Assembly (NCBI RefSeq): GCF_000143415.4 | Contig: NW_003314335.1 | Location: 179,982-243,981, forward strand | Source of the DNA: Selaginella moellendorffii | Lineage: Eukaryota > Plantae > Lycopodiophyta | Direction of reading: 5' to 3' | Length of the DNA stretch: 64,000 bases | Shown here: piece after piece, positions 791 through 40,244 of the stretch | Numbering within the stretch: the stretch's first letter is position 1 | How the letters are laid out: the number at the start of each line of letters is the position of its first letter | Notes under the pieces: generated by a model | What the model saw: the letters and a program-made list of their open reading frames with translations, nothing else | The model's database searches: none | What the model was told of the DNA's origin: nothing | Made by a program: the position numbers and the translations under genes

Positions 791-1276
791 ATGTTAGTCA
801 AAGTGTGCCACGCTGGCCTTTTACAAAGAGGGAGTGGCGATGAACCACCACCACTGTCACCACATCACCACCAAAAGAAGGCGTCCAAAATCATTCACAC
901 CCTAGTAAATTGGTTGCATGGTGATGGTTCTTCCCCCTCTTATGAAACCATGGACGATCACCAAGAACACCACGGCACTGCTTGTCACCGCGAGAAGATC
1001 AAGGGCGGCAGCGTCCCCGTCTACGTTGGCCATGGCAACCCGGAGCGCTTCCTCGTCAAGCTCAAGCTCATCAATCACCCCCTGTTTCGAAAGCTCCTGG
1101 AGCTGACCGAGGAAGAGCTGGGCTTTTGCGACAACTGCCGCCTCGTCGTTCCCTGCGACGCTCACGTCTTCCAGAGGGTTATCGCTCGCATCGATGCCGA
1201 GGAGAGCGGGAGAAAGCTGCGCCCCGCCGAGGAGGAACTCCTCGGCCTCTTTGATTCCATCCCCGGTTCCTCGTAA
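791..1276 (+). CDS. SAUR (small auxin-up RNA) family protein
   Basis: Intronless ORF with GSVPVYVG..ERFLVKLKLINHPLFRKLLELTEEELGF..RLVVPCD. True start may be a later Met. Confidence 0.85.
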   Translation: MLVKVCHAGLLQRGSGDEPPPLSPHHHQKKASKIIHTLVNWLHGDGSSPSYETMDDHQEHHGTACHREKIKGGSVPVYVGHGNPERFLVKLKLINHPLFRKLLELTEEELGFCDNCRLVVPCDAHVFQRVIARIDAEESGRKLRPAEEELLGLFDSIPGSS

Positions 1277-1400: not shown

Positions 1401-4051
1401 TTAGTCTTGTGTGTGCCGTGTTGTATTTTTGTTATACTTCTTAAAAGCCAGAGCTTGAGTGGCAGCAGGGTTCAAAGGGCTCCCTGCGTTGGAGCTTGAT
1501 CGGCTGCTGTGTTGAGTTCTGCTGAAACTCTTTAGTACGCTTGAAGCACTGCTGCTCCTACTGCTGCTACTGTCTTGGGAGAGATCTCCTATCAATAGAA
1601 TACTAACTGGAGAACCATTGAGAAGTCCACTGCTGCTAGAGCTTAAGCTTGTGTCTGAGAGCGAGTCTCCTTCCAAAAGACGAAGCACCTGGTGAAAAAG
1701 ACACGTTAAGCTGTGAAGCACACAGCATGTAAAGATCTGACCTGAGACATTCGAGGACGAATCAAAGGATCGGGGTCAATGCAAAGAGTGGCCGCAAGGA
1801 GCATGTTTTCCACCTCGTTTACACAAAATCTTCCCCGAAGCCGCTGATCAATCAGTTTCTCATACTTCTGCTCTCGAAGAAATGGTCGTGCCTGCATTCA
1901 ACAAGATTAGATGCAGCAAACTTCATTACTTATGGACTTACCCATTCCGACAAGCACATCTCTCCTTTGTTGCGAGATAAATCCACAGCCTTCCGACCAC
2001 TTACAAGCTCCAGGAGCACGATGCCAAAAGAGTAAACATCGGCTTTCTCTGTGATTTGTCCTGTTTGAGTATACTCAGGTGCCAAGTACCTACAGCTCCA
2101 GTGTCACCAAAGAATGAAGGCAAGGAAAAAAAACACAGCAAGAGTTACCCGAAAGCGCCAATGACTCTTGTCTCTACTCCGAGTTCTCCATTGGGTTGCC
2201 ATCTTGCAAGTCCAAAATCTCCCACCTGATGCTCAGACAAGTGAGTCGGACTATCCTATCGAATAGAAACTGAGACAAGAACTTACCATTGGCTCGAAGT
2301 CGTGGGTTAACAGAATGTTGTTTGGTCGCACGTCACGATGAACAATACATCCCACTCGGCACTCTTCATGTAAGTACCTCAAAGCTCGCGCGGCACCTAG
2401 CGCGATTTTCTGGCGAGCCGGCCATTCCAGAGTCACTGTTTTAGACCGCCTGCCATACAGGTGCGAATCCAGCGAGCCATTGCAAACGAACTCGTAAACG
2501 AGCAGCCTCTTCTTGTCTTCAGCGCAGTAGCCGATCAGCATCACCAAGTTTCGCTGCTGAGCACAGCTGAGAACTTCGACTTCCGCGCAGAATTCTTTGT
2601 CGCCCTGCGTGCTAGCCAGCTTATGCTGTTTGACAGCAACGGCTTGGCCATCAGGGAGCCTGCCCCTGTAAACTGAACCGTATCCACCTTCTGCGAGAAA
2701 GTTCACGTCCGAAAAGCCACCGGTTGCAAGTTGCAGCTCTGCGAAAGTGAATTTCCTGGGCGGCTTGCCGAAGACAGGCGTTTTGTGCTGGCAAATGGAG
2801 CATAAAGGAGGAGGCTGCGGAGACGACTGCTTTCTCAGATGGATCTGCTTTCGGACGCTGGACACTCGATCTACTGGCCTCGATACGTTTCTTTGCGTAT
2901 CCGTTTCCTCGGTATACTCCCGGCTTTCCTTCATTCGCAAGAAGTCATTAAGAACTTGTGGTTTATGGCTAGCTGGTGATGGAGTTGTGCTGTTCAGCAC
3001 TTCTGATGGCGGACCTGCAAAGCAATGGTTAAAACGGAATAAGAGCGAGCGAGCGTCCTACCTTTTCTACGGGTTTCATTTTTCAGCAACTCTTCTAAAA
3101 CTGAAAGCTCGAATTTCGGTGCCGTCACAAGTCGTGAATCCGGGCTACTGGCCTCTGAGCTGGATGTCGAGCTCTCCCAGTACAGCTGATCGAAGCCCTT
3201 GGGCATCACAGACAGGCTCAGTCCATTCAGAAGAACGGATGACGAGTCGATGGATTCTTCTTCATCGTACGGCAAATCACGTCTTTTGAGATTCAGCCTC
3301 AGGATTTTTGGATTGCTGCGATGCACAACGACGATATTGCTGTTAAGCTCTTGCAGGCAAAGCTTACCCTCGCTCTTTAGATTCCTGGCGTGAAAAGGAC
3401 TGTCACAGTAAACACCATCATACTTCCAACTTAGAAGACGTACCTATCAAGCACCACCCAAGTTGCCCGGAATCTCTTGGCCTCCGATGGAATGACTCCT
3501 CTACGAGCAAACTGGAGGATTTCTAGTGTCGTATGCACCTATGCTCACGAGATAGAATCTATAACTTAGCTCGACCATACCGAAATATAAAAAAACAAGC
3601 TCACCTTTTTAAGATCGTGGATTTTTCGGAGCTTCTCCATCACCATGGAGCATTTGTTCCGAATTTCTTCGAGCTCTTCCTTCCTAGTGGCTTTGAGCGA
3701 CGCAGCCGCTGCTGCTGCGCATTCTCCACCAAGCGCAGGAAATCCCCAGCTCTTCCAAACTGGAAAGCATCGAATGAGACTTTAAATCTAAGCGTATGGT
3801 CGACTGTTACCAGAATCTGAGGAATTGCTAGTGCTGCTGGCGGGCGCAATCGCCTGGAACACGATCCTATCGCCTGGATGAACCACGAGATTTGCTAGAG
3901 CCCAGTTTAGAGCATAGTCGGTCATCTTCTTGCTCGCGTCAACCGCGACGAGCACGATTTCTCGCTGAGACTCTTCGTCTGAGCTTTCCTGTGAACTGCT
4001 CACATCCATGACCTTGACTCGATTTAGCGGAAGGAGCTGAAATCTCTCCAT
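1401..4051 (-). CDS. USP-like domain + protein kinase (SELMODRAFT_444075-like RLCK)
   Basis: N-terminal [17 protein letters not shown]; [31 protein letters not shown]; [18 protein letters not shown] and YLAPEY motifs across multiple GT-AG exons; stop at 1401. Confidence 0.92.
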
Positions 4052-16363: not shown

Positions 16364-18430
16364 TCTATTTATCAATTTTTTTAATTACTAGTTCTTAGAG
16401 GTACACCACAAAAGAAGTTCACCAATTCCAAAGTATTAATCAAGGAAGTATTTTCATTGTTTGTCCCAGCAATCTCTTTCATAATGCCACTAACTATTAG
16501 CTAGCCCAAAGTCTATCTCAAGTAATTTGATAATTTAGCTCTTATAAAAGGTGTGAAAAATTTACCATAAACATTATATGAAAAACATCCATGCAACCAA
16601 AATCTATAACTTGGAATAAAGAATGGTTAAGAATCTTTTAAACCATCAAAAAAACACTTGAAGCCCATTCACAATAAACAAAAGTGTTATGTTTATCTAC
16701 CATGACCATTTCATAGATGCCCAAGCTCTTTTCCATAAGCAAATTAAGTTTCTTCAATTTATATTAGGGACATTTAGAGTATATTATTTTCAATCCAAGT
16801 GTTACACACAATTTTTTGAGTTTTAAAGTGGTAATTTCTGTCTTTGAACTTTTGCCACAGGATGTAGAAAAACCACCACAATAGACATTTGCGCTATATC
16901 CACCTTCTACCAATAAATCAATTATTGTCTTTTTTTCATTGGTCCAAATAAAGTTTTTTAGCCTTATTGCCATCTCCATTCTTTAAGTACTAATGCAATA
17001 ACAATCATTTCTTCCCTGAATATGGAGCATTGGCTAGCTAACCATAATGTTAACTTCCTTGTTGACCATTTTCCTGACCATCATTGATCTAGTTAACTTA
17101 TAGTTTTGGCAAAAACATTTAAATCTTAATGATAACATTAATTAATGTTGTTAGAAAATCCTTCTTAACTTTTGTTCCATATCCATTGAGCTCAAACTTT
17201 TGATAAAATATTACACCTTTAGTAGCTCATTATAAATGCTTATGAAACTAAGGCAAAAATCACAAAACTTATAAGCATATGCAAATCCCTATATAATCTC
17301 TAGTAACTAGTTCACAATATCAACCTCTTCAAATTTTTTGCAAATGAACATTCATGAAATCACTCCAAAAAGTTAGTTTTGATATCATTATTTTAATTTT
17401 CTCATTTCGATTTCTCTAGATAAGGATCATATTTATGCAGACCTGTGCATCCTTGCTCATGTGAATTTTGTGGCAAAACAGAAGCAACAGAAGGAGTTTG
17501 TTCTAGAGTTTATGGACATGGAAATCAAGACAAAGAGATTTTGATCCCAGCCTTTTTCCAAGCCTAGATTTTTTAGGTGCTGTTGCTGGATTGCAAATTC
17601 CCATTTTTAGAAGACCATAAAATTAATAATAATTTTAGAGTATGGATAAAAGAACTATTTGGCCCTGAATAGAAGCTTACATATGCTATTAACACATATT
17701 CAATCACACACTTGCTATTTAAAAGGAAATTCTAGGTTATAGAGGAAACAAAAAATCACACTCAATACATTTGATCATTTAGGTCCCACTTGGGTCTATC
17801 ATCAGATACCATAGACTCACTAGGAGACTTTACTCCACCTTTAACTGGACAAATTTTCCTTGGGCAAAGAGCATATGGTGGTGCTACACCTTTAGAATTA
17901 AACGATATGTTGATGATGGGCAGCAGACCATTGACAGAACATATCTCTTCAATAGATGGTTTAGACTCCAAATTCATTTATGCACCAGGCTGATAAAGTG
18001 CACAATCCATGGCATGATTTGGTGAATTTGGGCACCAAAACAAGTATTTCTCACCTACCTTAGAAGGATCTAGTTCCACATTGTGGTACTTCTCACCAGC
18101 CATTAGAAGTATTATCCATTTGTCAAGAGAGTTTTGATGTTCCTAATCTTTGGAAGAAGTAAATCCCTTAGGATTAGAAGGAGAAAAAGGAGGAGGCCAA
18201 CCTGATTTATACACTACTAGATAAGGCATACATAAAGTCTAAATTAAATAAAATTTTCAAATCCATGGATCCATAAAAATAAGACAAGTAGGCTATAATT
18301 AGCTTGGACCTAATTATTATTAAATATTATTATTATTTCTGGATGATGTTTGGCTAAATTCTAAAAACACATAGTAGAGGTTTATAAAAAGACCTAATCA
18401 AACTAAAACGAATATACTCTAAATATCTAC
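16364..18430. mobile_element. AT-rich, CG-depleted island; decayed transposon remnant (possibly MULE/SWIM-type on the minus strand)
   Basis: Sharp composition shift, near absence of CG, stop-riddled frames. The family assignment is weak (YEMVMVD..VYCEWA is SWIM-like). Confidence 0.5.
17441..17610. pseudogene. Inverted, deleted relic of peptide A plus ankyrin exon 2
   Basis: 17505-17610 (+) reads RVYGHGNQD..RDFDPSLFPSLDFL..GAVAGLQIPIF. 17441-17500 is the reverse complement of ~22224-22281. Confidence 0.8.
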
Positions 18431-20272: not shown

Positions 20273-21087
20273 ATGGCACGACTCGTGCAAGCCATTACGG
20301 AGTCAGACTTGGAAACTGCGTACGCAGCCATAGATCTCGTAGACAGCTTGAACATGCTGGTCCCAGGCGAGAACAGAGAGGCCCCGCTACTTGCAGCAGT
20401 GAAGCGGCACCATCGACTGGGTGCCTCTGCTGCTGGTGATGGATTTGTCCAGTATCTTTTGGAAAACGGGGCAGACCCAGACTTTCCATTGCCGGATGAG
20501 ATTTTGCACTGGTCAGGTAACATGTCTTTCTTGTCACAACCTTTACATTGTCACTCGTATGGTTGGTTCTCTTTCCAGGCGTACCCACCTTGCCGTCCCT
20601 GTATGCCAGCGGCCATCAAATGGATGACTTGGTCACGCTCTTCAAGCCCATAGCGCAGCCTGTCGAGGCTCTCACCAGCAAGCACTTGTGCAACGCTCGC
20701 GATCCCGAGCATCTGGAGCTCTTGCTCTTGCTCCCGCATATGGATCCCAACCGGACCTCGCCGGAGGGCTGGCTCCCTCTCATCGCTCCGCTGAATCGAA
20801 TAGAATTGGAGAATGTCAAACTGCTGATAGCCGCTGGGGCCGATCCAACGCTGCCGACTTATGATGGCTTTTGCCCGCTCGCCAGAGCGGCATTCTCGAA
20901 TGAGGACGAAGAGATCTTGCGAATTATGGCTAAGGTGGCCAGCAATATCAACGTGAAACCAGGGGAGTATACGGTTCTCCGCAGTGCTGCAGAGGCTGGA
21001 GTGTGTCGAGTTTTACTTGAGTGCGGGGCGTCGATGGACGATGACGATGGATTACCCGACTTGAGGTCTGCTTGCAATCCATGGTAA
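20273..21087 (+). CDS. Divergent ankyrin-repeat protein
   Basis: APLLAAV, VQYLLENGADPD, VKLLIAAGADPT, VCRVLLECGAS. One phase-1 intron at ~20517-20578. Confidence 0.75.
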
Positions 21088-21144
21088 TCTAAGTTCTTGC
21101 TTATTCAATTTTGTTCTATGCACTTGAAGTGTAAGCAGAACAAG

Positions 21145-21450
21145 TTAAAGAAGAACAACTGCTAGAACGGTAGCTACTGCCCCAAAAATGGGCACTTGCA
21201 ATCCAACAGCTGCGCCCTCTTGCAAGAAATCTGGGCTTGGAAACGGGCTGGGATCAAAATCCCTCCTCGCTCTTCTTCCGGGAACTACGGCTTGATCATC
21301 CTCGTCTTCATTTCCACGCCCACGAACTCTGCCTCGTAACGAGCTCTCCAGCATCAATGCCGGATCGAATGTATCCTCTCCTTGGATTGAGACCGCCAGC
21401 AGCAAAACCAGGAGGAAGATCGACGCCACCAAATTCGCACAAATCGCCAT
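21145..21450 (-). CDS. Peptide A1: small secreted, putatively GPI-anchored precursor (AG-peptide-like), 101 aa
   Basis: Signal peptide (LVASIFLLVLLLAVSIQG), acidic/basic prodomain, RRARR, DFDPSPFPSPDFLQE, then GAA spacer and hydrophobic C-tail. TATA box ~60 bp upstream. ORF is intact in a second copy. Confidence 0.8.
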   Translation of the reverse strand: MAICANLVASIFLLVLLLAVSIQGEDTFDPALMLESSLRGRVRGRGNEDEDDQAVVPGRRARRDFDPSPFPSPDFLQEGAAVGLQVPIFGAVATVLAVVLL

Positions 21451-21770
21451 TCCTTTCCTTCTTTTTGCGATCGAAGCAATGCTATTGCTATCTAATTGAT
21501 CCAACGCTTTTTATATATCGCGAGGGGAGATTTTGACCCTGTCAAGAAAGGAAAGTTCCTTGGGAGCGCATTTGACCGTGTGTACGCGAAATCTAATCTC
21601 ACACACCACCTCACTTTCTTGACTAGATGAGTCCACGCGACGATATTCTTTTCGTGTCTCCCGGCAGAGTTTTCTACTCATTCTTCGAAAGTGGCCTTGG
21701 ATTTGGACGCGACAAAGGATCGCTATATAGGTCGAAAGAAGGGTATTTTCATCCCAAAAGATCACTGGCA
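21451..21770. promoter_or_regulatory. Bidirectional promoter with two outward TATA boxes and a W-box cluster
   Basis: TATA-like elements at ~21508-21518 (-) and 21724-21729 (+). TTGACC at 21533 and 21572, TTGACT at 21619, inverted TTGAC core at 21541. Confidence 0.6.
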
Positions 21771-22001
21771 ATGAAGCCTTCGATCCTTGTTTTGGCATTG
21801 GTTTTGATCTTGGTAGCTCTCGAGGCATGGACAATTCGAGCGGAGCAACAAGCCCACACTCCAGAATCCAATCCAGTCCAATTGCAGCGCCGATCTAGAC
21901 CACGAGCTAGAGGCGCGGGCACTAGCGGCAGCGCTGGATTGGAGGTGTCGGCGCTTGGGATAATTGGAATTGTCACTGCCGCCATAGCCGCGATTGCGTA
22001 A
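21771..22001 (+). CDS. Peptide B: small secreted, putatively GPI-anchored basic peptide, 76 aa
   Basis: MKPSILVLALVLILVALEAWTIRA signal, QRRSRPRARG, SGSAG omega-like region and hydrophobic tail LEVSALGIIGIVTAAIAAIA. Confidence 0.75.
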   Translation: MKPSILVLALVLILVALEAWTIRAEQQAHTPESNPVQLQRRSRPRARGAGTSGSAGLEVSALGIIGIVTAAIAAIA

Positions 22002-22063
22002 AGATTCTTTGTATATTCTTTGGCAATGTAAAGCACTCTTTTCTCTTTTCCTTGGAAGCCCTG

Positions 22064-22842
22064 ATGGGTCGTGTGTTACCAGCGAGTGAAGAGCCGCCGC
22101 CAGCACAGGAGTGTGAGTTTGATGTAGATGATCTTCTCCAGGTAAAAGTCTCCGGGGTTCTTGGAATGGGTGTCTCCAGATTTTCAATCTCTAGGCTGCA
22201 AGGTATGGAGAACTCGAGGAAGTCAAGCTCGTTGCTCCTCTTTTGCCGCAGAATTCACATAACGAGCAGGGATGCACAGGTAGAAGATTTCTCGCTTTGA
22301 TTTTTTCTCGCGTATGATCTTACTACTCTAAAGCATTGCATATGGCTTCTGCCAATGGTCACTTGAGCATTGTCAAGTATCTCGTCGAACGAGGAGAAGT
22401 AAGTCGCGTAGCGAAGGAGATCTTAGAAAATGTTTTTGATCGCTCGTGTTCACAGAATGTTAATGCTTGCAATGCCGAGAACAATACCCCTCTTCATTGG
22501 GCTGCTCTAAATGGCCAAGTTCAGGCATGTTTTTCTTCTTGCTATTCTTTCGTGATTCGCAAAGTGTTCTTCATTTGGATTTCTTGTTTTTTTTTCCCAG
22601 GTTGTGGAGGAGCTTATTGCTTCGGGAGCTAGCGCCTCAGCTTTGAACCGGTCTGATCATGAACTTTAGGCTCGAAAGTGTATCGGGTTTCAATTGCTCT
22701 TGCTTTTCCATTTTCCAGTTACGATCGGACGCCGGTAGACGAGGCCCTGTCTCGGGGAAAACAAGAAGTCGTGAACGCCATAGCAATTCTCACAGCCGCG
22801 GCATCCCTGGACGACACAAGTATACAAGAAGAGATTAACTAG
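22064..22842 (+). CDS. Small ankyrin-repeat protein (YAR1-like)
   Basis: VDDLLQAARYGELEEV, TALHMASANGHLSIVKYL, NTPLHWAALNGQVQVVEELI, RTPVDEA. Six exons, with one GC donor at 22525. Confidence 0.88.
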
Positions 22843-22949
22843 TAATTTAGTTGAAGAAGCTGGTTAGCCTCCTCACAGCCTGGGGCTTGAGGCCATGGTG
22901 GATATTAGATAAGCTCGCGTCTATTTCCTAACAATCGATCGCGCCATAG

Positions 22950-25900
22950 TAGATCAAGCTTTCCCAGACCATTCAAATTAAATTATGCTTTCTACTTTAC
23001 TTTCATAGGTTCCTTAAGAATAGAATGTTTTTTTTATGTAAAGTGATATTTATATTATAATTTTACCTATTCATTTAACTTATATTCTTTTCAAACAGAA
23101 AACCCAAACATTTGAAATAGATGATTGAATCATATATTTTTAACACTTCTAAAAAGAATTATATTTTCTTCTTAGATAGAGATTATAATTTTTTAATAAG
23201 TTAAATGAATTATAATAATAAAGAAAAAGCTATTATATGTTTAAGAGCTTATAATAGATGGAAAACACTAAAATTACAAAAAAATGCATACAGTTATTTA
23301 AAGATTTAGTATTATAAAACTTATTTATAAAATAGAATAATAAGAAGGTTAATTATTTAAAACTTTCATTTATAGGTTATAAATTTTATTAGAAAGAATA
23401 ATTTATAATTATTCTAACATTACAAAATAATATTGTTGAATTATTATAAATAAAATATATTATAAATTAGCACTATATTCTTTAAAAAAGTAAGTTATAG
23501 ATTTATGAAAATAGTTTTAAATATTTTTTCTTATATTGTGTAAGGAAAAATATTTATCATGCTTTATTATAATGTTTGCTTAGTAGTCCATTGTAAAAAT
23601 AAAAATGATGATTGTAAAGATATAAATGATAATTATAAGTGTTATAATTGAGACACAACTCTAAATAAATAAGTTTAAGTTATAGCAAACATTTATATTC
23701 TATACTACTTTAAATAATTTATAAGGTTTATTTAAAAGATTTATCTCAACCAACTTGAATGTTTATTATTTTTATATAAATTAATTTAACTTTTAAAAAA
23801 CTATTATGGCGTTTTACTTAGATAATTAAATAATATTTGATAGAAAATAAATACTTTAAACAAATAATGCTAAAGAAAATATTTAATTTTTATTTCCTTT
23901 GGATATTAACTTATATGAGTGCATGGAATACAAAAATATGCATATCAATTAGCCTAGAAACCTTAGTTTATATACAAAAGGTCTAAATTGAAACCAATCC
24001 AACAATTTATATCCCACTGTGCTAATATTAATATATAGCATTGTATCTATACACTTGGACCTTATATCATTCCTTCCTCTCAAAACAATATAAGATAGTT
24101 AGAGTTCTATTGTGGATGGGCCAGGAACATTATGAGGAAGCATTAATGGATTTATAATTGGTGTTAGTTGTTCTTGATCCCTTTGTACAAAGCATTTCAA
24201 TTAATATATTGTAAACGACTAAATTTTCCATTTTACTTTAATCATTTAACCACATTTTTGACCATTTAGAATTTCTCTCACAACCTTTATAACTCATATT
24301 CCCAACTTATAGACATATTAACCTTATGGCCATGTTTATTTACCTTTATCTCATTGGTAATCCAAAACCACTCATACCATAGTCTTATCTCCCAAAGATT
24401 AAACCCTTCATCAATGAGTAGTTATCTCAAGACCACACTTTAACATCCTTAGGATGCACAAAGAAATGGGAAACACCCTTCATCAATATCCCTTCTTTAG
24501 TCTTTAATAAATCCCTTTCTATCCACAGCTGTACTCACTAACATTGCCACTAGTTTAAGGTTTAAAGGTTTAACCATTAAATCTCATTAACATTTAGGAC
24601 TTCCTTGCCGTGTAAGTGTATCTTTAGTCACTACACAAGAGGATTGTTCTTCTTCTTTTCCACAGTTTAAGATTTGGGGATAATATTTCAAAACATCGTA
24701 ACCCAATGTGAGTCTTATGGGTACTTTTTTTACCTTCTGCCTTTGGGTGCCCTAACTATGTGGCTAGAGCGAGGTTTTAATGAGCTATGCCAAGTATCCA
24801 AGTATGTGGTGCCACTTATATTTAAATTAGGAGCATTGACCATTTGATTTCCTAGAGGAGCTAAAGTTGGTTCTTGAACACTTTAGTAAGTTACCTCACT
24901 TGTCCATCTATATTCATTTAACCTTAGACTCTTTAATGGTTATATCATCACCTACTACATAGATATACCTTTGTTTAATTATATTAACTTTTGCTACCAA
25001 ATTAGTTTTATTGGAATCTTTCCCTTACTATCCTTTTGGAGTTCACCAAACCCCCCAGGGTTTGGGAGATGATTGCTTTGGACTTTCACCTTTGGACTTA
25101 GACTCAAACTTAAACTTAGTTCTGATTTTGGTCTTGGTTTTAGTCTTGGTCTTAGTCCCTATTTCGAACTCCATCTCAGACTCTTTATTAGACTCTATTT
25201 TGAATTCTTTCTCAAATTCCATTTTAGACTCCTTCTCAAACTCCTTGAATTCCTTATCGGAATCGACACTTTTATGTATCATAATATTTGCCATATGACA
25301 GTCCTTCTTGTGCCCTTTTTAGAGACTTATTCATTAATTGCTTCATGCTCATTTGTTAAACACTTTGTTCGGAGTTTCACTTTTGTTCTCAACTTTCCAT
25401 GTCAAAGCTTTTAATCTAAACGTGTTACATTTGTTAAACTTTCATTTTAACCACTATTATGTGCAACACTTTCAACTCCACTTTAGGGCTTAGGGATTTA
25501 TGTTTACCATCTTGGAGTTTAGATCTAAATTCATGTGTATTACAACAAACAAACTTAAGAGATAACTTATATAAGGAATATAAAATGTAAAATATTTTAT
25601 ATAAAAGGAATATAAATTTAAATATAAAAGGAAAAGGCCCATGGATAAGAATACCCCCTTTTAAAGTCTTGGGATACTTAGGGTTAACTATCTTTAAATT
25701 TAACTAGTATGCATTAGCTTAATTTAGATTTCTTGGGAGATACATGTTTTTTCACACATTTTTTCATGTTTTTTTTCACTCTCACATTCCCAAAGTATAT
25801 ACCTTTTTATCTCTCTTATGCCACATTTGACACTTGTCTTTGGGAAAATTGATACATTAACTAATACATGCTTTTTATAGATTTTGTGCACTCTTACATT

Positions 25901-26627: not shown

Positions 26628-26936
26628 TCATATGAGAAGAACACCTGCTAGAACGGTAGCTACTGCCCCAAAAATGGGCACTTGCAATCTAATAGCAGCG
26701 CCCTCTTGCAAGAAATCTGGTCTTGGAAATGGGCTGGGATCAAAATCCCTCCTCGCTCTTCTTCCTGGAACTACGGCTTGATCATCCTCGTCTTGATTTC
26801 CACGCCCGTGAACTCTGCCTCTTAACGAGCTCTCCAGCACCAATGCCGGATCGAATCTATCCTCTCCTTGGATTGTGACCGCCAGTAGCAAAACTAGGAG
26901 GAAGATCGACGCCACCAAATTCGCACGAATCGCCAT
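26628..26936 (-). CDS. Peptide A2: intact duplicate of peptide A1, 102 aa
   Basis: About 90% aa identity to A1, ORF uninterrupted, TATA box retained. Confidence 0.78.
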   Translation of the reverse strand: MAIRANLVASIFLLVLLLAVTIQGEDRFDPALVLESSLRGRVHGRGNQDEDDQAVVPGRRARRDFDPSPFPRPDFLQEGAAIRLQVPIFGAVATVLAGVLLI

Positions 26937-27115
26937 TCCTTCCCTTCTTTTTGCGATCGAAGCAATGCTATCAAATTGATCCAAGTTACAACCCTTTTTA
27001 TATATCGCGAGGGGAGATCTAGACCCTGTCAAGAAGGAAAGGTCCTTGGGAGCGCATTTGACCGTGTGTACGCGAAATCTAATTTCACACACCACTGCAC
27101 TTTCTTGACTAGATC

Positions 27116-27640
27116 CAGGTTTTGATGTTGGTAGCTCTCGAGGCATGGACAATTCGAGCGGAGCAACAAGCCCACGCTCCAGAATCCAATCCAGTCCAAT
27201 TGCAGCGCGCTCGATCTAAACCACGAGCTAGAGGCGCGGGCACTAGCGGCAGCGATGCACAGGTAGAAGATTTCTCGCTTTGATTTTTTCTCGCCTGTGA
27301 TCTTACTACTCTAAAGCATTGCATATGGCTTCTGCCAATGGTCACTTGAGCATTGTCAAGTATCTCATCGAACGAGGAGAAGTAAGTCGCGTAGCGAAGG
27401 AGATCTTAGAAAATGTTTTTGATCGCTCGTGTTCACAGAATGTTAATGCTTGCAATGCCGAGAACAATACCCCTCTTCATTGGGCTCCTCTAAATGGCCA
27501 GTTCAGGCATGTTTTTCTTCTTGCTACAAAGTGTTCTTCATTTCAATTTCTTTTCTTTTTCCCAGGTTGTGGAGGAGTTTATTGCTTTAGGAACTAGTGC
27601 CTCAGCTTTGAACTGGTCTGATCATGAACTTGAAGTTGAA
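27116..27640 (+). pseudogene. Fused pseudogene of peptide B and the YAR1-like ankyrin gene
   Basis: Peptide B TATA and start are deleted. A second deletion joins the equivalents of ~21933 and ~22271. Frameshift near GGCCAGTTCAG; last exon lost. Confidence 0.85.
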
Positions 27641-28710
27641 GAAGCTGGTTAGCGTAGTGCTTGAGGCCATGGTGGATATTAGATAAGCTCGTGTCTATTT
27701 CCTAGCAATCAATCGCTCCATAGTAAATCAAGCTTTCCCAGATGTTATACTTTCATAGTTTCCTTAAGAATAGAATTTTTTTATAATGTATATTCAAATT
27801 ATAATTTTACATATTATATTCTCTTCAAACAGAAAACCTAAACATTTGAAATAGATGATTGAATCATGTATTTTTAACATTTTTAAAAAGAATTATATTT
27901 TCTTCTTAGTAGAAATTATAAAATTTTGTTTTTTTAATAAGTTAATTGAATTATAATAATAGGGATAATACTACTATATGTTTAAGAACTTATAATAGAT
28001 GAAAAATACTAGTAAAATTCTAAAAGATGTATATGGCTATTTAAGGATTTAGCATTATAAACATTGTTTATAAAATAGAATAATTAGAAGTATAATTATT
28101 CAAAAAATTTAATGTATAGGTTTTAAATATTAATAAAAAATATGATTTAAAATTATTCTAATTTTACAAAAATAATATTGGTGCTAATTTATAATATATT
28201 TTTATTTATAATAAATGTTTTCTATTTAATTATTTATAAAATTTATCTCAACAATATTATAAAAAAATGTAAATTATATATTTATAAAAATAGTTTCAAA
28301 TATTGTTATTTATATTGTGTTGGGCAAAATATTTAGCATGTTTTGTTATGATGTTTGCTTAGCAATCTGTTATAATAATAAAATGATGATTGTAATGATA
28401 AAAACAATAATTATGTCAAAGTATTTTGGGCAATAATGTTATAATTGAGACACAACCCTAAATAAATAAATTGAAGTTATGGCACACATTTATATTCTAT
28501 ACTACTTTTAATAATTTATAAGGTTTATTTAAAACATTTATCTCAACCAACTTGAATATTTATTTTATATATATAAATTACTATATAAAATAAGTAAAAT
28601 CTGATAGCTTATCTAGTTAAGTAATTAAATAATATTTGATATAAAGCAAATAATTTTAACAAATAATGCTAAATTAAATATTTTATAAAACATAATATTT
28701 TATTTCCCGT
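27640..28710. repeat. Duplicate of the AT-rich tail 22850-23900
   Basis: Long collinear matches, e.g. AAACATTTGAAATAGATGATTGAATCAT and TGTTATAATTGAGACACAAC. Confidence 0.85.
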
Positions 28711-29849: not shown

Positions 29850-30664
29850 GCTGGGGTGGGAGCTGAGAGCTACTGCAAGAATTCAGCTATGCAAGCTCAA
29901 TGTTTTGTGCATGGCCACTCATCAAAGCCATGATGTGTTTGCTAATGCAAAACACATTAGTATTGCAGATCTGGGCTGTTCTTCGGGGCCGAACACAATT
30001 CACGCTGTTGACCTTGTGCAATCGCCAAATGTTGAGATCCATGCATCTAGTCACTAATGACTACAACACCTTGTTCAAGCCCCTGGCAGAGCATAGATGC
30101 CAAGGGAAGCCTTATTTCTACGCTTCAGTCCCAGGTTCGTTTTATGGAAGGTTGCTCCCAAATACTACTCTTTTAACATCTCACTACATTGTACATGCTG
30201 CCTTTTTTCACTCTGAAGTTAAAATACAAAAAACGTTATGTTTCAGTTACCACAAGATATCACCGGGAAGGACTGTCATGGATAAGCATTCAAGCAAGAA
30301 ATGTAAACAAGGGGTCTTATCCTTGCTCTTGGCAGGAAGATCTTCTGAGGACCCCATTTTATGGAAGCTTCACTTCCAAGCTGCATGGGAGCGTTTTAAA
30401 GAGGTGAGGACTATGATTAACATCAACCTTCCACTGTACTTTCGAAATGTTTCAAAGGCTGTGGAAACCACTCAGTGTTTCAAGGTGCTGCATAAGTTGT
30501 GCAAGAAGGACCCGCGGTACCATGAAACATTCGATTTTGGAGCAAGTGACTATGCCAAGAAAATAGTGAGCTACACAAAAGCCATAAGCCAAGCAAACGT
30601 GGAGCTACTATGTAAGAAAATGGAGTTCACAACCTCCTTTATTATACTGACCAGGCATGTGTGA
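29850..30664 (+). pseudogene. SABATH SAM-dependent carboxyl methyltransferase pseudogene
   Basis: GVGAESYCKNSAMQ, IADLGCSSGPNT and NDYNTLF..VPGSFYGRLLP are not in one continuous frame. Frameshifts and internal deletions. Confidence 0.85.
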
Positions 30665-33367: not shown

Positions 33368-34973
33368 ATGTCGCAGCTTTCGGCAGAGGAGGCTCATGTC
33401 TACTCGCAGAGCCCAGCGCATTACGCAGTCGCCAGATGCGACTATGGCCTCCTCCGATCGGTGCTCTCCCGGCTGCCGCGATTGCCAACCGCGGGAGAGG
33501 TTAGCTCCGAGGTGGACTCGCTTCTAGCGGAGCAAAAGGCCGATATAGTTTCGTCGGTGATCGACAACAGGGAAGTTCCTGGGAGGGAGACTCCATTGCA
33601 TTTGGCGGTGAGGCTCGGGAATGCGAGGGCGGTGGAGATGCTAGCGGCAGCAGGGGCGGACTGTAGTTTGCAGAATGGTCGGGGATGGAGTGCGCTCCAG
33701 GAGGCCGTGTGTGCTCGCAAGGAAGCTATTGCGATGGTCATCACCAAGTACTATCAGCCCATGGCGTGGTCGAAGTGGTGTCGGCGGCTGCCACGGATTG
33801 TAGCGGAGCTCAACAGGATGAAGGATTTCTACATGGAGCTCACGTTTCATTTCGAGAGCTCGGTCATCCCGTTTATCGGGAGGATTGCTCCGTCGGACAC
33901 TTACAAGATATGGAAGCGTGGTTCCAACCTGAGAGCGGACATGACACTGGCTGGCTTCGACTCGTTCAAGATCCAGAGGTCGGATCGGAGCTACTTGTTC
34001 TTGGGAAAAGAGAATATGGGATCTGGAGAGCTCTTGGTGCTGATGCACAAGAAGAAGGAGGTTGTGAATGCGTTTGAAGATGCCGCGGTACAGCCATCGG
34101 ACGCTGAGGTGGCTCACGAGGTGGCTGTGATGTCTCGGGCGAATGTCTATCGGCCAGGTTTGGATGTAACTCAAGCGCAGCTGGTTCCGCAGTTGACGTG
34201 GAGGAAACACGAGAAGGCCGAGACAGTGGGGAACTGGAAGTGCAAGGTGTATGACATGCAAAACGTGTCCGTTAGTATCAGATCTAGAAAGGTGCTGGGG
34301 GCAGTGGAGGAAGACGAAGAAGAGGAAACTTTAGATTATGCCAACTTGCTAACGGAGGAGGAGAAACATCAGCTGGAGATGGTTTTGAGTGGCGATTGCG
34401 AGAACTTAGAAGAACAGAAAGAGAACTCGGCTTGTGTCAATGGTCGAGGTGGGAGGCCGAAAGCCGAAAAGTCCAGGCCTATAAGCGGTAAGGAAGAGGA
34501 CGATTCCAAAAAGTCTAGCGCAAAGGAAGAGGAGAGCGAGTTCAAGAAGGGACTTAGACCCACCCTTTGGGTGACAGATAATTTTCCTCTCAAGATCGAG
34601 GAGCTTCTTCCACTGCTTGACATTTTGTCCAGCAAAGTCAAGGCCGTCCGGAGGCTTAGAGAGTTGCTGACTACGAAACTGCCAGCGGGAACTTTTCCTG
34701 TCAAGGTTCGATTCTTTTTCTTTTTCTTTTTCCAGTGTAAGCCTCATTGCGTGTCAACAGATGTCCATTCCGGTGGTGCCGACGATTAGAGTCATCGTCA
34801 CGTTTTCCAAGTTCCAAGAGCGGCACGCGATGCAGAACAACCTGAAACCCGAGCATACTGGATCCTGGTTTTCTTGGATGAAAAGTTCGAATCCTAGTTC
34901 CGAGCACGCGGACCCGTTCCTGGTTCCAGGCGATTATACGTGGAAGAAAGGGAAGCAAGTGATCGTCCCATAG
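33368..34973 (+). CDS. ANKRD13-like protein (ankyrin + GPCR-chaperone-1 domain)
   Basis: ETPLHLAVRLG, GWSALQEAVC, DFYMELTFHFESSVIPFIGRIAPSDTYKIWKRG, LPAGTFPVK|MSIPVVPTIRV. Confidence 0.93.
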
Positions 34974-37212: not shown

Positions 37213-38512
37213 TCAAATCGGATCACACGTCTGCGACGAGCACAAAGATCCCAACCGCAGCGACAAATCCAACTGAAACAGCCCCCCGCCGCCGACACCA
37301 ACTCCGTCACCTCCGTCACCGTCACTCCGTTCTCCATCCCTCGCCAAATCTTCCAAGTTCGTAGCCGTGGTACTCTGCTTGTGAGCCGTGGTGGTGGCGG
37401 TGGTGGTGGCATTGTCCTCGGCCACTGCCACATGAACGTTCTNNNNNNNNNNNNNNNNNNNNNNNNNNNNNNNNNNNNNNNNNNNNNNNNNNNNNNNNNN
37501 NNNNNNNNNNNNNNNNNNNNNNNNNNNNNNNNNNNNNNNNNNACTTGCCGCCCGGAAGATCCTCGTCGAGGAAGCTTGCTCCAAATCCCCTGCCCCCTCC
37601 AACCAGATCCTCAAACCGAGCACCGCTCCTCATCCCTCCTCCTCCTCCTCCGCCCAGATACTTCCCCACCGCCGGCTGCAATGAGATCGAGGCTGGTCGC
37701 AGCCATCCGTGGTGCCCGGTCGGGAGAGCCGGCGCTGGGCTTCCCCCGCCGCCACCATTGGCCGATCGCACAGCGTTCTCGATCAGCGTGGTGGCGGTGA
37801 GATGCGCGGCCGAGTGGGCTTTCACCCCGAGATTCCTGTCGAGGGAGCTGGCCCCGGAGCCCAGGATGGGCGAGTGGATGTGGCGGTAGGCCTGCGCGAG
37901 GCTGTGAGATCGCTGCGCTTGCCTCGCCGCGGTGCGCTCCCTCTTGTGGGCGTTTTGGTGGCCGCCCAGCGCTTGCGAGCTCGTGAACTTGCGCTGGCAA
38001 TACGGGCAAGGGAAGACCCGCGGCTCGGACGCCTGGCCGCCGAAAGCCGTCGGCGAGGAATCGAGAGATGGAGGAGGAACTGAGATCATCCCTCCTCCTA
38101 CCAAGCCTTGGTGGTGATGATCGTGAGGAGGAGCCGGCCTCTTGGCACTGTCGAAGAGAGGAGGGCTCGACATCCAATCCCGGCTGCTGCATTCCACGTC
38201 CCCGGAGGCGCTGGGCTTGGATTGATTGGTGCCGCTGCAAGAATCCAAATCTTTGGGCGATTCCTGGAATTTGGGATGATCCCGGGTCCAGCAGCTCTCG
38301 TCGGGCTTGACCTCCAAAAGAACGGCCTGGCCCGGCGAGAGGATGTGGTGAGAACCGAAGCGAGCGAGAGGAAGATCGTCCCCTTCCTCCTGGTGGAGTC
38401 TTTTCGTCTGGAAATCACCAATGCTCAAGCTCAGATCCAAAGCTGACCTCTTGAATCGCCGCGATGCATCGTCTTGGCCGCCCCAGGCGTGGCTCAGCTC
38501 CGTTGTTGACAT
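37213..38512 (-). CDS. Single-finger C2H2 (QALGGH) transcriptional repressor with EAR motifs; spans an assembly gap
   Basis: [29 protein letters not shown]; LDLSLSI near the N-terminus; LDLSLRL downstream of the N-gap. Confidence 0.88.
37443..37542. other. Assembly gap (100 N)
   Basis: N run. Confidence 1.
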
Positions 38513-40142: not shown

Positions 40143-40244
40143 NNNNNNNNNNNNNNNNNNNNNNNNNNNNNNNNNNNNNNNNNNNNNNNNNNNNNNNNNN
40201 NNNNNNNNNNNNNNNNNNNNNNNNNNNNNNNNNNNNNNNNNNNN
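40143..40244. other. Assembly gap (102 N)
   Basis: N run. Confidence 1.

What the first reader, a model, noticed from the sequence alone, without database searches (positions are those of the whole stretch)
21145..22001. Head-to-head pair of small secreted, GPI-signal-bearing polybasic peptides: candidate undescribed cell-surface peptide module
Seen: both intronless ORFs have a signal peptide, an Arg cluster (RRARR; RRSRPRAR) and alignable C-terminal tails (GAAVGLQVPIFGAVATVLA vs GSAGLEVSALGIIGIVTA), suggesting an ancient inverted duplication. In A, cleavage after RRARR and at the omega site would leave a ~16-residue acidic Pro-rich peptide, DFDPSPFPSPDFLQE(G). B would leave a basic one. Known: classical AG-peptides have signal + short Pro-rich core + GPI signal but no long prodomain with a multibasic site, which is a peptide-hormone feature. 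Inference: a co-regulated acidic/basic pair of processed, membrane-tethered or releasable peptides.
Basis: partly seen in the sequence, partly recalled or inferred. Interest (0 to 1): 0.75.

Follow-up and report, generated by a model that had tools for sequence, protein, structure and literature searches.

The report
Two unannotated spikemoss surface-peptide ORFs
Two small back-to-back open reading frames in a Selaginella intergenic gap look like genes for tiny secreted, lipid-anchored proteins with no known relatives, but expression could not be checked, and only one of the two survives in a nearby duplicate.

Summary
The two ORFs exist exactly as described: A at 21145-21450 (-), 101 aa, and B at 21771-22001 (+), 76 aa. 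They lie in Selaginella moellendorffii between an annotated ankyrin gene and a small Yar1-like ankyrin gene.

For real genes:
- Each has a signal-peptide-like start, an Arg cluster and a hydrophobic C-terminus with GPI-signal geometry. This combination is beyond chance: only A, its duplicate A' and B show it among 351 ATG-ORFs, and simulated windows average 0.02.
- Each has a TATA box 47-67 nt upstream, and the ORF start is the first ATG after it.

Against, or weak:
- Neither ORF is annotated. Neither has any relative by word search, and A none in a scan of 1.84 billion proteins.
- A duplicate 5.5 kb away keeps A' intact (90% aa identity), but constraint is not significant (dN/dS 0.40, p=0.09). 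There B has lost its start and its tail.
- A's codon usage is coding-like; B's is uninformative.
- A and B are not demonstrably homologous.

Verdict: A is probably a real, lineage-restricted small secreted or GPI-type gene, and B possibly. The "co-regulated, processed acidic/basic module" is unsupported. Small non-AGP GPI-anchored peptides are already a described class in Arabidopsis. Transcription could not be tested.

The parts
21145..21450 (-). ORF A, 101 aa: signal-like residues 1-21/24, acidic Cys-free core (pI 4.5) with RRARR and a D-F-D-P-S-P-F-P-S-P-D-F motif, then G-A-A, spacer and a 14-residue hydrophobic tail to the C-terminus
   Evidence: Codon-usage score 0.103, best of its six frames and equal to the mean of true coding chunks. 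No Pfam, PDB or protein relatives.
21508..21517 (-). TATATAAAAA box 67 nt upstream of the A start codon, with no other ATG in between; identical in the duplicate copy
   Evidence: direct reading
21724..21729 (+). TATATA box 47 nt upstream of the B start codon, with no other ATG in between; deleted in the duplicate copy
   Evidence: direct reading
21771..22001 (+). ORF B, 76 aa: signal-like residues 1-20/23, basic 30-aa core with RRSRPRAR, then S-A-G, spacer and a 13-residue hydrophobic tail to the C-terminus
   Evidence: Codon-usage score -0.019, not better than other frames. No relatives by word search.
26628..26936 (-). A', intact duplicate of A (102 aa, 90% aa identity, 18 nt substitutions, no indel) with its conserved TATA box and upstream region
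27118..27257 (+). B', a broken remnant of B. It matches B codons 11-54 only. The TATA box, ATG and signal peptide (equivalent of 21629-21799) and the C-tail (equivalent of 21937-22265) are deleted.
17441..17608 (+). Third, decayed copy in AT-rich DNA: a piece of the Yar1-like exon 2 region next to a piece of A (residues about 43-89) with 37-nt and 6-nt deletions
20273..21087 (+). Upstream neighbour: annotated ankyrin-repeat gene SELMODRAFT_425419 (250 aa, 2 exons). Its stop codon lies 58 nt from the A stop codon, and the two genes converge.
22064..22842 (+). Downstream neighbour: small ankyrin-repeat gene (Yar1-like by my reading; about 6 short exons). Its ATG lies 63 nt after the B stop codon.

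Best explanation
A is most likely a real but unannotated gene restricted to Selaginella, and B less certainly so. Both would encode a small secretory-pathway protein.

Inferred mechanism:
- The N-terminal hydrophobic segment targets the nascent chain to the ER and is cleaved.
- The last 22 residues act as a GPI-attachment signal: a small-residue triplet (G79-A-A in A, S54-A-G in B), a 6-7-residue spacer, and a 13-14-residue hydrophobic tail ending at the C-terminus.
- This would leave a disordered, Cys-free, charged peptide on the outer face of the plasma membrane, about 55 aa and acidic for A and about 30 aa and basic for B.
- Each ORF has its own TATA-type core promoter. The two promoters diverge and lie about 200 nt apart.

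Shown: the ORFs, their non-random architecture, the TATA positions, an intact paralogue of A, and coding-like codon usage for A.
Inferred only: transcription, translation, signal-peptide cleavage, GPI addition, and any cleavage at the Arg clusters.

The locus lies in a duplication-prone stretch, and the copies decay (B', copy 3). These look like young or fast-evolving genes under weak constraint, not parts of a conserved system.
For: - Architecture beyond chance: 3 of 351 ORFs, all of them A, A' and B; simulated windows give a mean of 0.02 and never two or more.
- A TATA box lies 67 nt (A) and 47 nt (B) upstream. The ORF start is the first ATG after each box, with a purine at -3.
- G+C of the two ORFs is 0.5-0.6, like the exons here, against about 0.3 in the surrounding non-genic DNA.
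- A's codon-usage score is 0.103 and A' scores 0.074. Each is the best of its six frames and within the range of true coding chunks (0.097 +/- 0.078).
- A' keeps the full ORF, the start codon, the TATA box and both hydrophobic ends after 5.9% divergence. It has no indel, where 3.07 were expected from neighbouring duplicated DNA (P=0.046). dN/dS is 0.40.
- The AlphaFold model shows only terminal helices and a disordered core, as expected for this class.
- The protein atlas places both A and B nearest to the same unnamed plant 'transmembrane protein' clusters of 105-121 aa. It also lists the GPI-anchored CD24 family for both and an AG-peptide cluster for A. Scores are 0.75-0.89, so these are leads only.
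- No alternative gene on the opposite strand and no Rfam family.
Against: - No gene model exists. Exact look-ups and the word search find nothing for A or B. phmmer of A against 1.84 billion representatives gives 0 hits at E<=0.001, not even a self hit. So neither the JGI nor the RefSeq annotation calls A; B was not put through that scan.
- No relatives in metagenome contigs.
- dN/dS does not differ significantly from 1 (Fisher p=0.09). 62% of random 18-substitution sets keep the ORF open. A's coding sequence diverged as much as its flanks, 5.9% against 3.9%.
- B is destroyed in copy 2, and a third copy of A has decayed.
- B's codon usage is uninformative.
- Spacing is very tight: 58 nt between the A and ankyrin-gene stop codons, and 63 nt from the B stop to the next gene's ATG.
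- The signal-peptide and GPI calls are my own rule-of-thumb readings, not SignalP or NetGPI output.
Confidence: 0.5

Rival explanations
1. The ORFs are not functional genes. They are untranslated or only incidentally translated open frames in a G+C-rich intergenic or promoter region. B is an upstream ORF in the 5' leader of the Yar1-like ankyrin gene, whose promoter is the TATA box at 21724. A is promoter-associated antisense sequence or a dying proto-gene.
For: - Unannotated and without any relative.
- Near-neutral divergence between A and A'.
- B' is broken and copy 3 has decayed.
- B's frame has no codon-usage advantage.
- B stops 63 nt before the ATG of the next gene.
- Comparable or longer ORFs occur on the opposite strand of the same DNA.
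Against: - The signal-like plus tail-like combination is very unlikely in random or background ORFs, yet it occurs twice side by side.
- Each ORF starts at the first ATG after its own TATA box.
- A's frame has coding-like codon usage and no indel in the duplicate.
Confidence: 0.33
2. The ORFs are real small membrane proteins but are not GPI-anchored. Either the N-terminal segment is an uncleaved signal anchor and the C-terminal segment a second transmembrane helix (a hairpin microprotein), or the protein is a type I single-pass protein with no cytosolic tail.
For: - The AlphaFold model shows long helices at residues 2-27 and 73-100.
- A has no positive charge before its hydrophobic stretch.
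- The nearest atlas clusters are named 'transmembrane protein'.
Against: - Both tails end exactly at the C-terminus and follow a small-residue triplet at a distance of 22 residues, the textbook GPI-signal layout (layout from my own knowledge of the Eisenhaber rules cited in PMC6726743).
- The fully hydrophobic part is only 13-14 residues, short for a plasma-membrane helix.
Confidence: 0.1
3. One reading: a co-regulated acidic/basic pair of GPI-tethered propeptides. Each is cut at its multibasic site to give short, tethered or releasable signalling peptides. The pair arose by an ancient inverted duplication.
For: - Divergent TATA promoters about 200 nt apart.
- Arg clusters in both ORFs, and RRARR is unchanged in A'.
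- Opposite net charge of the cores.
- Weak tail similarity, p about 0.03.
Against: - The pair is not kept together in the duplicate.
- A/B homology is not significant.
- Cutting B after its Arg cluster would leave a neutral 6-7-residue stub, not a basic peptide.
- The Arg clusters do not match the RxxL/RxLx site used for plant RALF-type precursors (my own knowledge).
- No conservation outside this locus.
Confidence: 0.05
4. The ORFs are ordinary members of the arabinogalactan-peptide family.
For: - Signal plus Pro-containing core plus GPI-type tail.
- Two Ser-Pro dipeptides in A.
- B is 76 aa with 36.8% PAST.
- An AGP23-type cluster appears at score 0.75 in the atlas.
Against: - A is 101 aa with 26.7% PAST, and only two clustered glycomodules.
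- B has one glycomodule.
- The cores are 54-58 and 30 aa, against 10-15 aa in AG peptides (criteria in PMC5266747; counts).
- No Pfam AGP hit.
Confidence: 0.02

Closest known systems
Arabidopsis 'GPI-anchored peptides' (GAPEP class; eight genes listed in PMC6726743, Table of predicted GPI-APs)
   Same: Very small precursors made of an N-terminal signal, a short non-AGP core and a C-terminal GPI signal. Function unknown. The class is defined by architecture.
   Different: No sequence similarity and no Pfam family hit for A or B at E<=1. The A core is longer (about 55 aa) and highly charged, with an Arg cluster.
Arabinogalactan peptides (AG peptides, e.g. the AtAGP12 type; criteria in PMC5266747)
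   Same: Signal peptide plus short core plus GPI signal. A has two Ser-Pro dipeptides that could be hydroxylated and glycosylated.
   Different: They fail the length, PAST, glycomodule-number and mature-length criteria. The cores are dominated by Asp/Glu/Arg, not Pro/Ala/Ser/Thr.
Plant secreted peptide precursors with basic processing sites (RALF, PSK, CEP, CLE types)
   Same: A signal peptide, a variable charged prodomain, a basic cluster and a Pro-containing segment C-terminal to it.
   Different: Those precursors end with the mature peptide, not with a hydrophobic GPI-type tail. No Pfam match. The RxxL/RxLx subtilase motif is absent (my reading).
CD24-type small GPI-anchored surface peptides of animals
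   Same: Listed among the nearest language-model neighbours of both A and B (scores 0.82 and 0.80). A tiny disordered core lies between a signal peptide and a GPI signal.
   Different: A different kingdom and no homology. The match reflects architecture only and is below the tool's reliability threshold.

Membership tests
GPI-anchored proteins (general) | Cleavable N-terminal ER signal peptide | tested here: inconclusive
   The hydropathy rule is met by A, A' and B, and plausible small residues at -3/-1 can be read (A-V-S in A). SignalP was not available.
GPI-anchored proteins (general) | C-terminal signal: small omega, omega+1 and omega+2 residues, a 5-10-residue spacer, and a hydrophobic tail to the C-terminus | tested here: inconclusive
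   The layout is present by direct reading (G-A-A in A and S-A-G in B, each 22 residues from the end, with 13-14-residue tails). No NetGPI, PredGPI or big-PI run was possible.
GPI-anchored proteins (general) | Experimental lipid anchoring (PI-PLC release, anchor mass) | not testable with these tools
   Needs bench work.
AG peptides | Total length below 90 aa with at least 35% Pro+Ala+Ser+Thr (PMC5266747) | tested here: not met
   A: 101 aa, 26.7%. A': 102 aa, 24.5%. B alone passes marginally (76 aa, 36.8%).
AG peptides | [quoted passage not shown] | tested here: not met
   A has SP at residues 68 and 72, plus a distant PA at 30. B has a single TP.
AG peptides | Mature backbone of 10-15 residues | tested here: not met
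   The cores are 54-58 aa (A) and about 30 aa (B), unless an unproven extra cleavage occurs.
Arabidopsis GAPEP gene families | Sequence membership (Pfam family hit) | tested here: not met
   No Pfam family at E<=1 for A. B has only a sub-threshold chance hit to PF21415. The Arabidopsis sequences themselves were not compared.
Known plant peptide-hormone precursor families (RALF, PSK, CLE, CEP, IDA and others) | Family motif or profile match | tested here: not met
   No Pfam hit. For A, no phmmer hit in 1.84 billion proteins.
Expressed protein-coding gene | Transcript and translation evidence | not testable with these tools
No plant transcript or genome collection is reachable.
Expressed protein-coding gene | Purifying selection between copies | tested here: inconclusive
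   A against A': dN/dS 0.40, Fisher p=0.09. No indels in the coding sequence, P=0.046.

The most novel reading that the evidence does not exclude
A (with A') founds a Selaginella-specific family of GPI-tethered propeptides. Cleavage at the invariant RRARR site would leave a 16-residue acidic, Pro-rich peptide on the lipid anchor. This would be a membrane-tethered peptide signal. B, transcribed divergently, would be a basic counterpart.
Probability: 0.05. Interest if true: 0.6.

Novelty: new member of a known kind. Interest (0 to 1): 0.27.

Why it matters
If A is expressed, it is an example of the small secreted or GPI-type genes that standard annotation of early-diverging land plants misses. 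It would add a lycophyte-specific entry to the poorly understood class of tiny GPI-anchored peptides. The three local copies (one intact pair, one with only A intact, one decayed) also show how such small genes turn over. If it is not expressed, the finding is an unusually gene-like pair of ORFs of no consequence. Either way it does not bear on a long-standing open question.

Tried and rejected
- Pfam on A, B, their longer TTG-started versions and all overlapping opposite-strand ORFs: nothing.
- Exact look-up in the 15-billion-protein collection: absent.
- Word-based homologue search for A and for B: none.
- phmmer of A against 1.84 billion representatives: none. B was not run because the cap is one job.
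- PDB sequence search for A: none.
- Rfam over 20900-22300: none.
- Metagenome contig scan with the A/A' alignment: none.
- Earlier notes of this scan, by words and by sequence: nothing on this locus.
- AlphaFold on the A/A' alignment: low confidence (pLDDT 60.6, pTM 0.29), so I ran no fold search.
- Idea that the A/B gap is an intron of one long ankyrin gene: rejected. The annotated 250-aa protein ends at the stop codon at 21087. The paralogue's different C-terminus is the same DNA read in another frame.
- AG-peptide membership: rejected on composition.
- Inverted-duplication origin of A and B: not significant.
- The Yar1-like gene was read exon by exon only.

Full report
**Organism and setting**

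I confirmed this. The ORF just upstream of the finding is 100% identical to the annotated S. moellendorffii protein SELMODRAFT_425419 (250 aa, ankyrin repeats). Its two exons map to 20273-20518 and 20579-21087.

Downstream, from an ATG at 22064 to a stop at 22842, lies a small multi-exon ankyrin-repeat gene. By my reading it resembles Yar1-type proteins. I read its exons one at a time and neither built nor searched a joined model.

The finding occupies the 976-nt gap between these two plus-strand genes.

**The observation**

- ORF A runs 21450->21145 on the minus strand (101 aa). ORF B runs 21771-22001 on the plus strand (76 aa).
- Both start with a hydrophobic, uncharged stretch.
- Both contain an Arg cluster (RRARR; RRSRPRAR).
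- Both end in a hydrophobic tail that runs to the last residue. Twenty-two residues from the end sits a triplet of small residues (G-A-A in A, S-A-G in B), followed by a 6-7-residue spacer and a 13-14-residue hydrophobic run. This is the textbook layout of a GPI-attachment signal (layout from my own knowledge).
- The cores contain no Cys and no N-glycosylation sequon. A's core is acidic (pI 4.5, net -5). B's core is basic (pI 11.8).

**Is it more than chance?**

ORF length alone is not evidence. Equally long ORFs lie on the opposite strand of the same DNA. The architecture is another matter.

- With fixed hydropathy rules, 20 of 351 ATG-ORFs of 50-250 aa in the window are signal-like and 7 are tail-like. 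Only three are both: A, B and a duplicate of A.
- In 300 simulated windows with the same local composition, the mean was 0.02 such ORFs, and never two. I set the rules after seeing the sequences, so the exact figures are generous, but the excess is large.
- Each ORF has a TATA box upstream: TATATAAAAA 67 nt before A's ATG, and TATATA 47 nt before B's.
- In both cases the ORF start is the first ATG after the box, with a purine at -3.
- G+C over both ORFs is 0.5-0.6, as in the exons here. Non-genic stretches of the window are near 0.3.

**A second and a third copy**

tBLASTn and BLASTN of the window against itself found a duplicate 5.5 kb downstream.

| Copy 1 | Copy 2 | Identity |
|---|---|---|
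| 21149-21628 | 26635-27114 | 91.8% |
| 21800-21936 | 27118-27257 | 95% |
| 22266-22666 | 27249-27631 | 92% |
| 22849-23887 | 27634-28686 | 77% |

Copy 2 lacks three blocks present in copy 1:
- 21629-21799, which holds B's TATA box, ATG and signal peptide.
- 21937-22265, which holds B's tail and the first two exons of the Yar1-like gene.
- 22667-22848, which holds the last exon of the Yar1-like gene.

So in copy 2 both B and the ankyrin gene are wrecks. A' (26628-26936, minus strand) keeps its TATA box, start codon, both hydrophobic ends, RRARR and the Pro-rich motif, at 90% amino-acid identity. A third copy at 17441-17608, in AT-rich DNA, has decayed, with 37-nt and 6-nt deletions inside the A part.

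**How much constraint does the A/A' pair show?**

Little that is significant.
- There are 18 substitutions: 8 synonymous and 10 non-synonymous. dN/dS is 0.40, with Fisher p=0.09.
- 62% of random sets of 18 substitutions would leave the ORF open.
- A's coding sequence diverged 5.9%, against 3.9% for the other duplicated stretches.
- The one nominally significant sign is the absence of indels. From the 7 indels in 691 nt elsewhere, 3.07 were expected (P=0.046). The value is weaker if the three large deletions are counted in a wider denominator.

**Codon usage**

A log-odds table built from six verified coding regions of the window gives these scores.

| Sequence | Score | Rank among its six frames |
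|---|---|---|
| A | 0.103 | best |
| A' | 0.074 | best |
| True coding 90-codon chunks | 0.097 +/- 0.078 | true frame best in 12 of 18 |
| B | -0.019 | tied with two other frames |

The test has modest power, since the true frame won in only 12 of 18 control chunks. A looks coding. B is undecided.

**Relatives**

None were found.
- Pfam gives nothing for A, and only a chance sub-threshold hit for B.
- The exact sequences are absent from the 15-billion-protein collection.
- The word search finds nothing for either ORF.
- phmmer of A against 1.84 billion representatives gives no hit at E<=0.001, not even A itself. A is therefore in no annotation held there.
- There are no PDB relatives, no metagenome relatives and no Rfam family in the gap.
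- The language-model atlas puts both A and B nearest the same unnamed plant 'transmembrane protein' clusters of 105-121 aa. It also lists CD24 for both and an AG-peptide cluster for A. The scores of 0.75-0.89 are below the level the tool calls reliable.
- AlphaFold gives only two terminal helices and a disordered middle at low confidence. I ran no fold search.

**A against B**

- BLASTP finds no alignment.
- Smith-Waterman scores against shuffles give p about 0.03 for the tails. For the whole proteins p is about 0.08 when the composition of each segment is preserved.
- The DNA shows only a 13-nt inverted match, over the G-L-Q/E-V codons.

An inverted-duplication origin is therefore possible but not shown.

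**What it most likely is**

- About even odds: A is a real, unannotated, lineage-restricted small gene whose product enters the ER and is probably GPI-anchored, or otherwise held in the membrane by its C-terminus.
- B is possibly the same kind of gene. It has weaker support, because its codon usage is uninformative, it is lost in copy 2, and it stops only 63 nt before the next gene's ATG. It may instead be an upstream ORF of that gene.
- The main rival, at about one in three, is that neither ORF is functional.
It proposes a co-regulated acidic/basic pair cut at multibasic sites. The pair is not kept together in the duplicate, and no processing evidence exists. Cutting B after its Arg cluster would also leave a neutral 6-7-residue stub, not a basic peptide.

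**Comparison with known families**

- AG peptides share the three-part layout, but A and B fail the published criteria (PMC5266747).
  - Those criteria are: length below 90 aa with at least 35% PAST, at least three glycomodules within 10 residues, and a mature backbone of 10-15 aa.
  - Only B meets any of them, and only the length/PAST rule, at 76 aa and 36.8%.
- A class of small non-AGP 'GPI-anchored peptides' is already listed for Arabidopsis (PMC6726743). The kind of molecule is therefore known, although A and B share no sequence with any Pfam family.
- I therefore file the finding as a possible new member of a known kind, conditional on expression.

**What could not be done**

I could not see the annotated gene table of the locus, the second haplotype, or the paralogous loci of P0002 and P0003.
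- No Selaginella transcript or genome collection is reachable with the other tools, so transcription remains untested.
- SignalP and NetGPI are not available here. The signal and anchor calls are rule-of-thumb readings.

Noticed in passing
window 26635-28686 compared with 21149-23887: A local segmental duplication of the A-B-Yar1-like unit, offset about 5.5 kb. The copy of the Yar1-like ankyrin gene (exons 3-5 at about 27318-27631) lacks exons 1, 2 and 6 and has a 1-nt deletion at an exon end, so it is a pseudogene.
   Followed up: partly
window 17441-17608: A third, inverted, decayed fragment joins a piece of Yar1-like exon 2 directly to a piece of A inside AT-rich DNA. It could be an old duplicate with deletions, or gene fragments captured by a transposon.
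   Followed up: partly
window 20273-21087; proteins P0002, P0003: The ankyrin gene SELMODRAFT_425419 has a 95% identical relative (LOC9660114, 162 aa) and a 78% identical relative (SELMODRAFT_430531, 284 aa) on other scaffolds. The C-terminus of LOC9660114 reads the same end of the gene in another frame. Their neighbourhoods might hold further A/B copies, but I could not fetch them.
   Followed up: partly
window 33368-34789 (+): An intronless 473-aa ORF with ankyrin repeats and an ANKRD13 C-terminal domain (E 1e-86). This is a third ankyrin-repeat gene within 14 kb.
   Followed up: no
window 791-1276 (+), 2251-3000 (-), 29900-30664 (+): ORFs matching a SAUR-type auxin-responsive protein, a protein-kinase domain, and a partial SABATH-type carboxyl methyltransferase (only profile positions 62-115 of 335 matched; possibly a fragment).
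   Followed up: no
window 37443-37542 and 40143-40244: Two assembly gaps (runs of N). The first lies inside the 396-aa C2H2 zinc-finger ORF at 37322-38512 (-).
   Followed up: no
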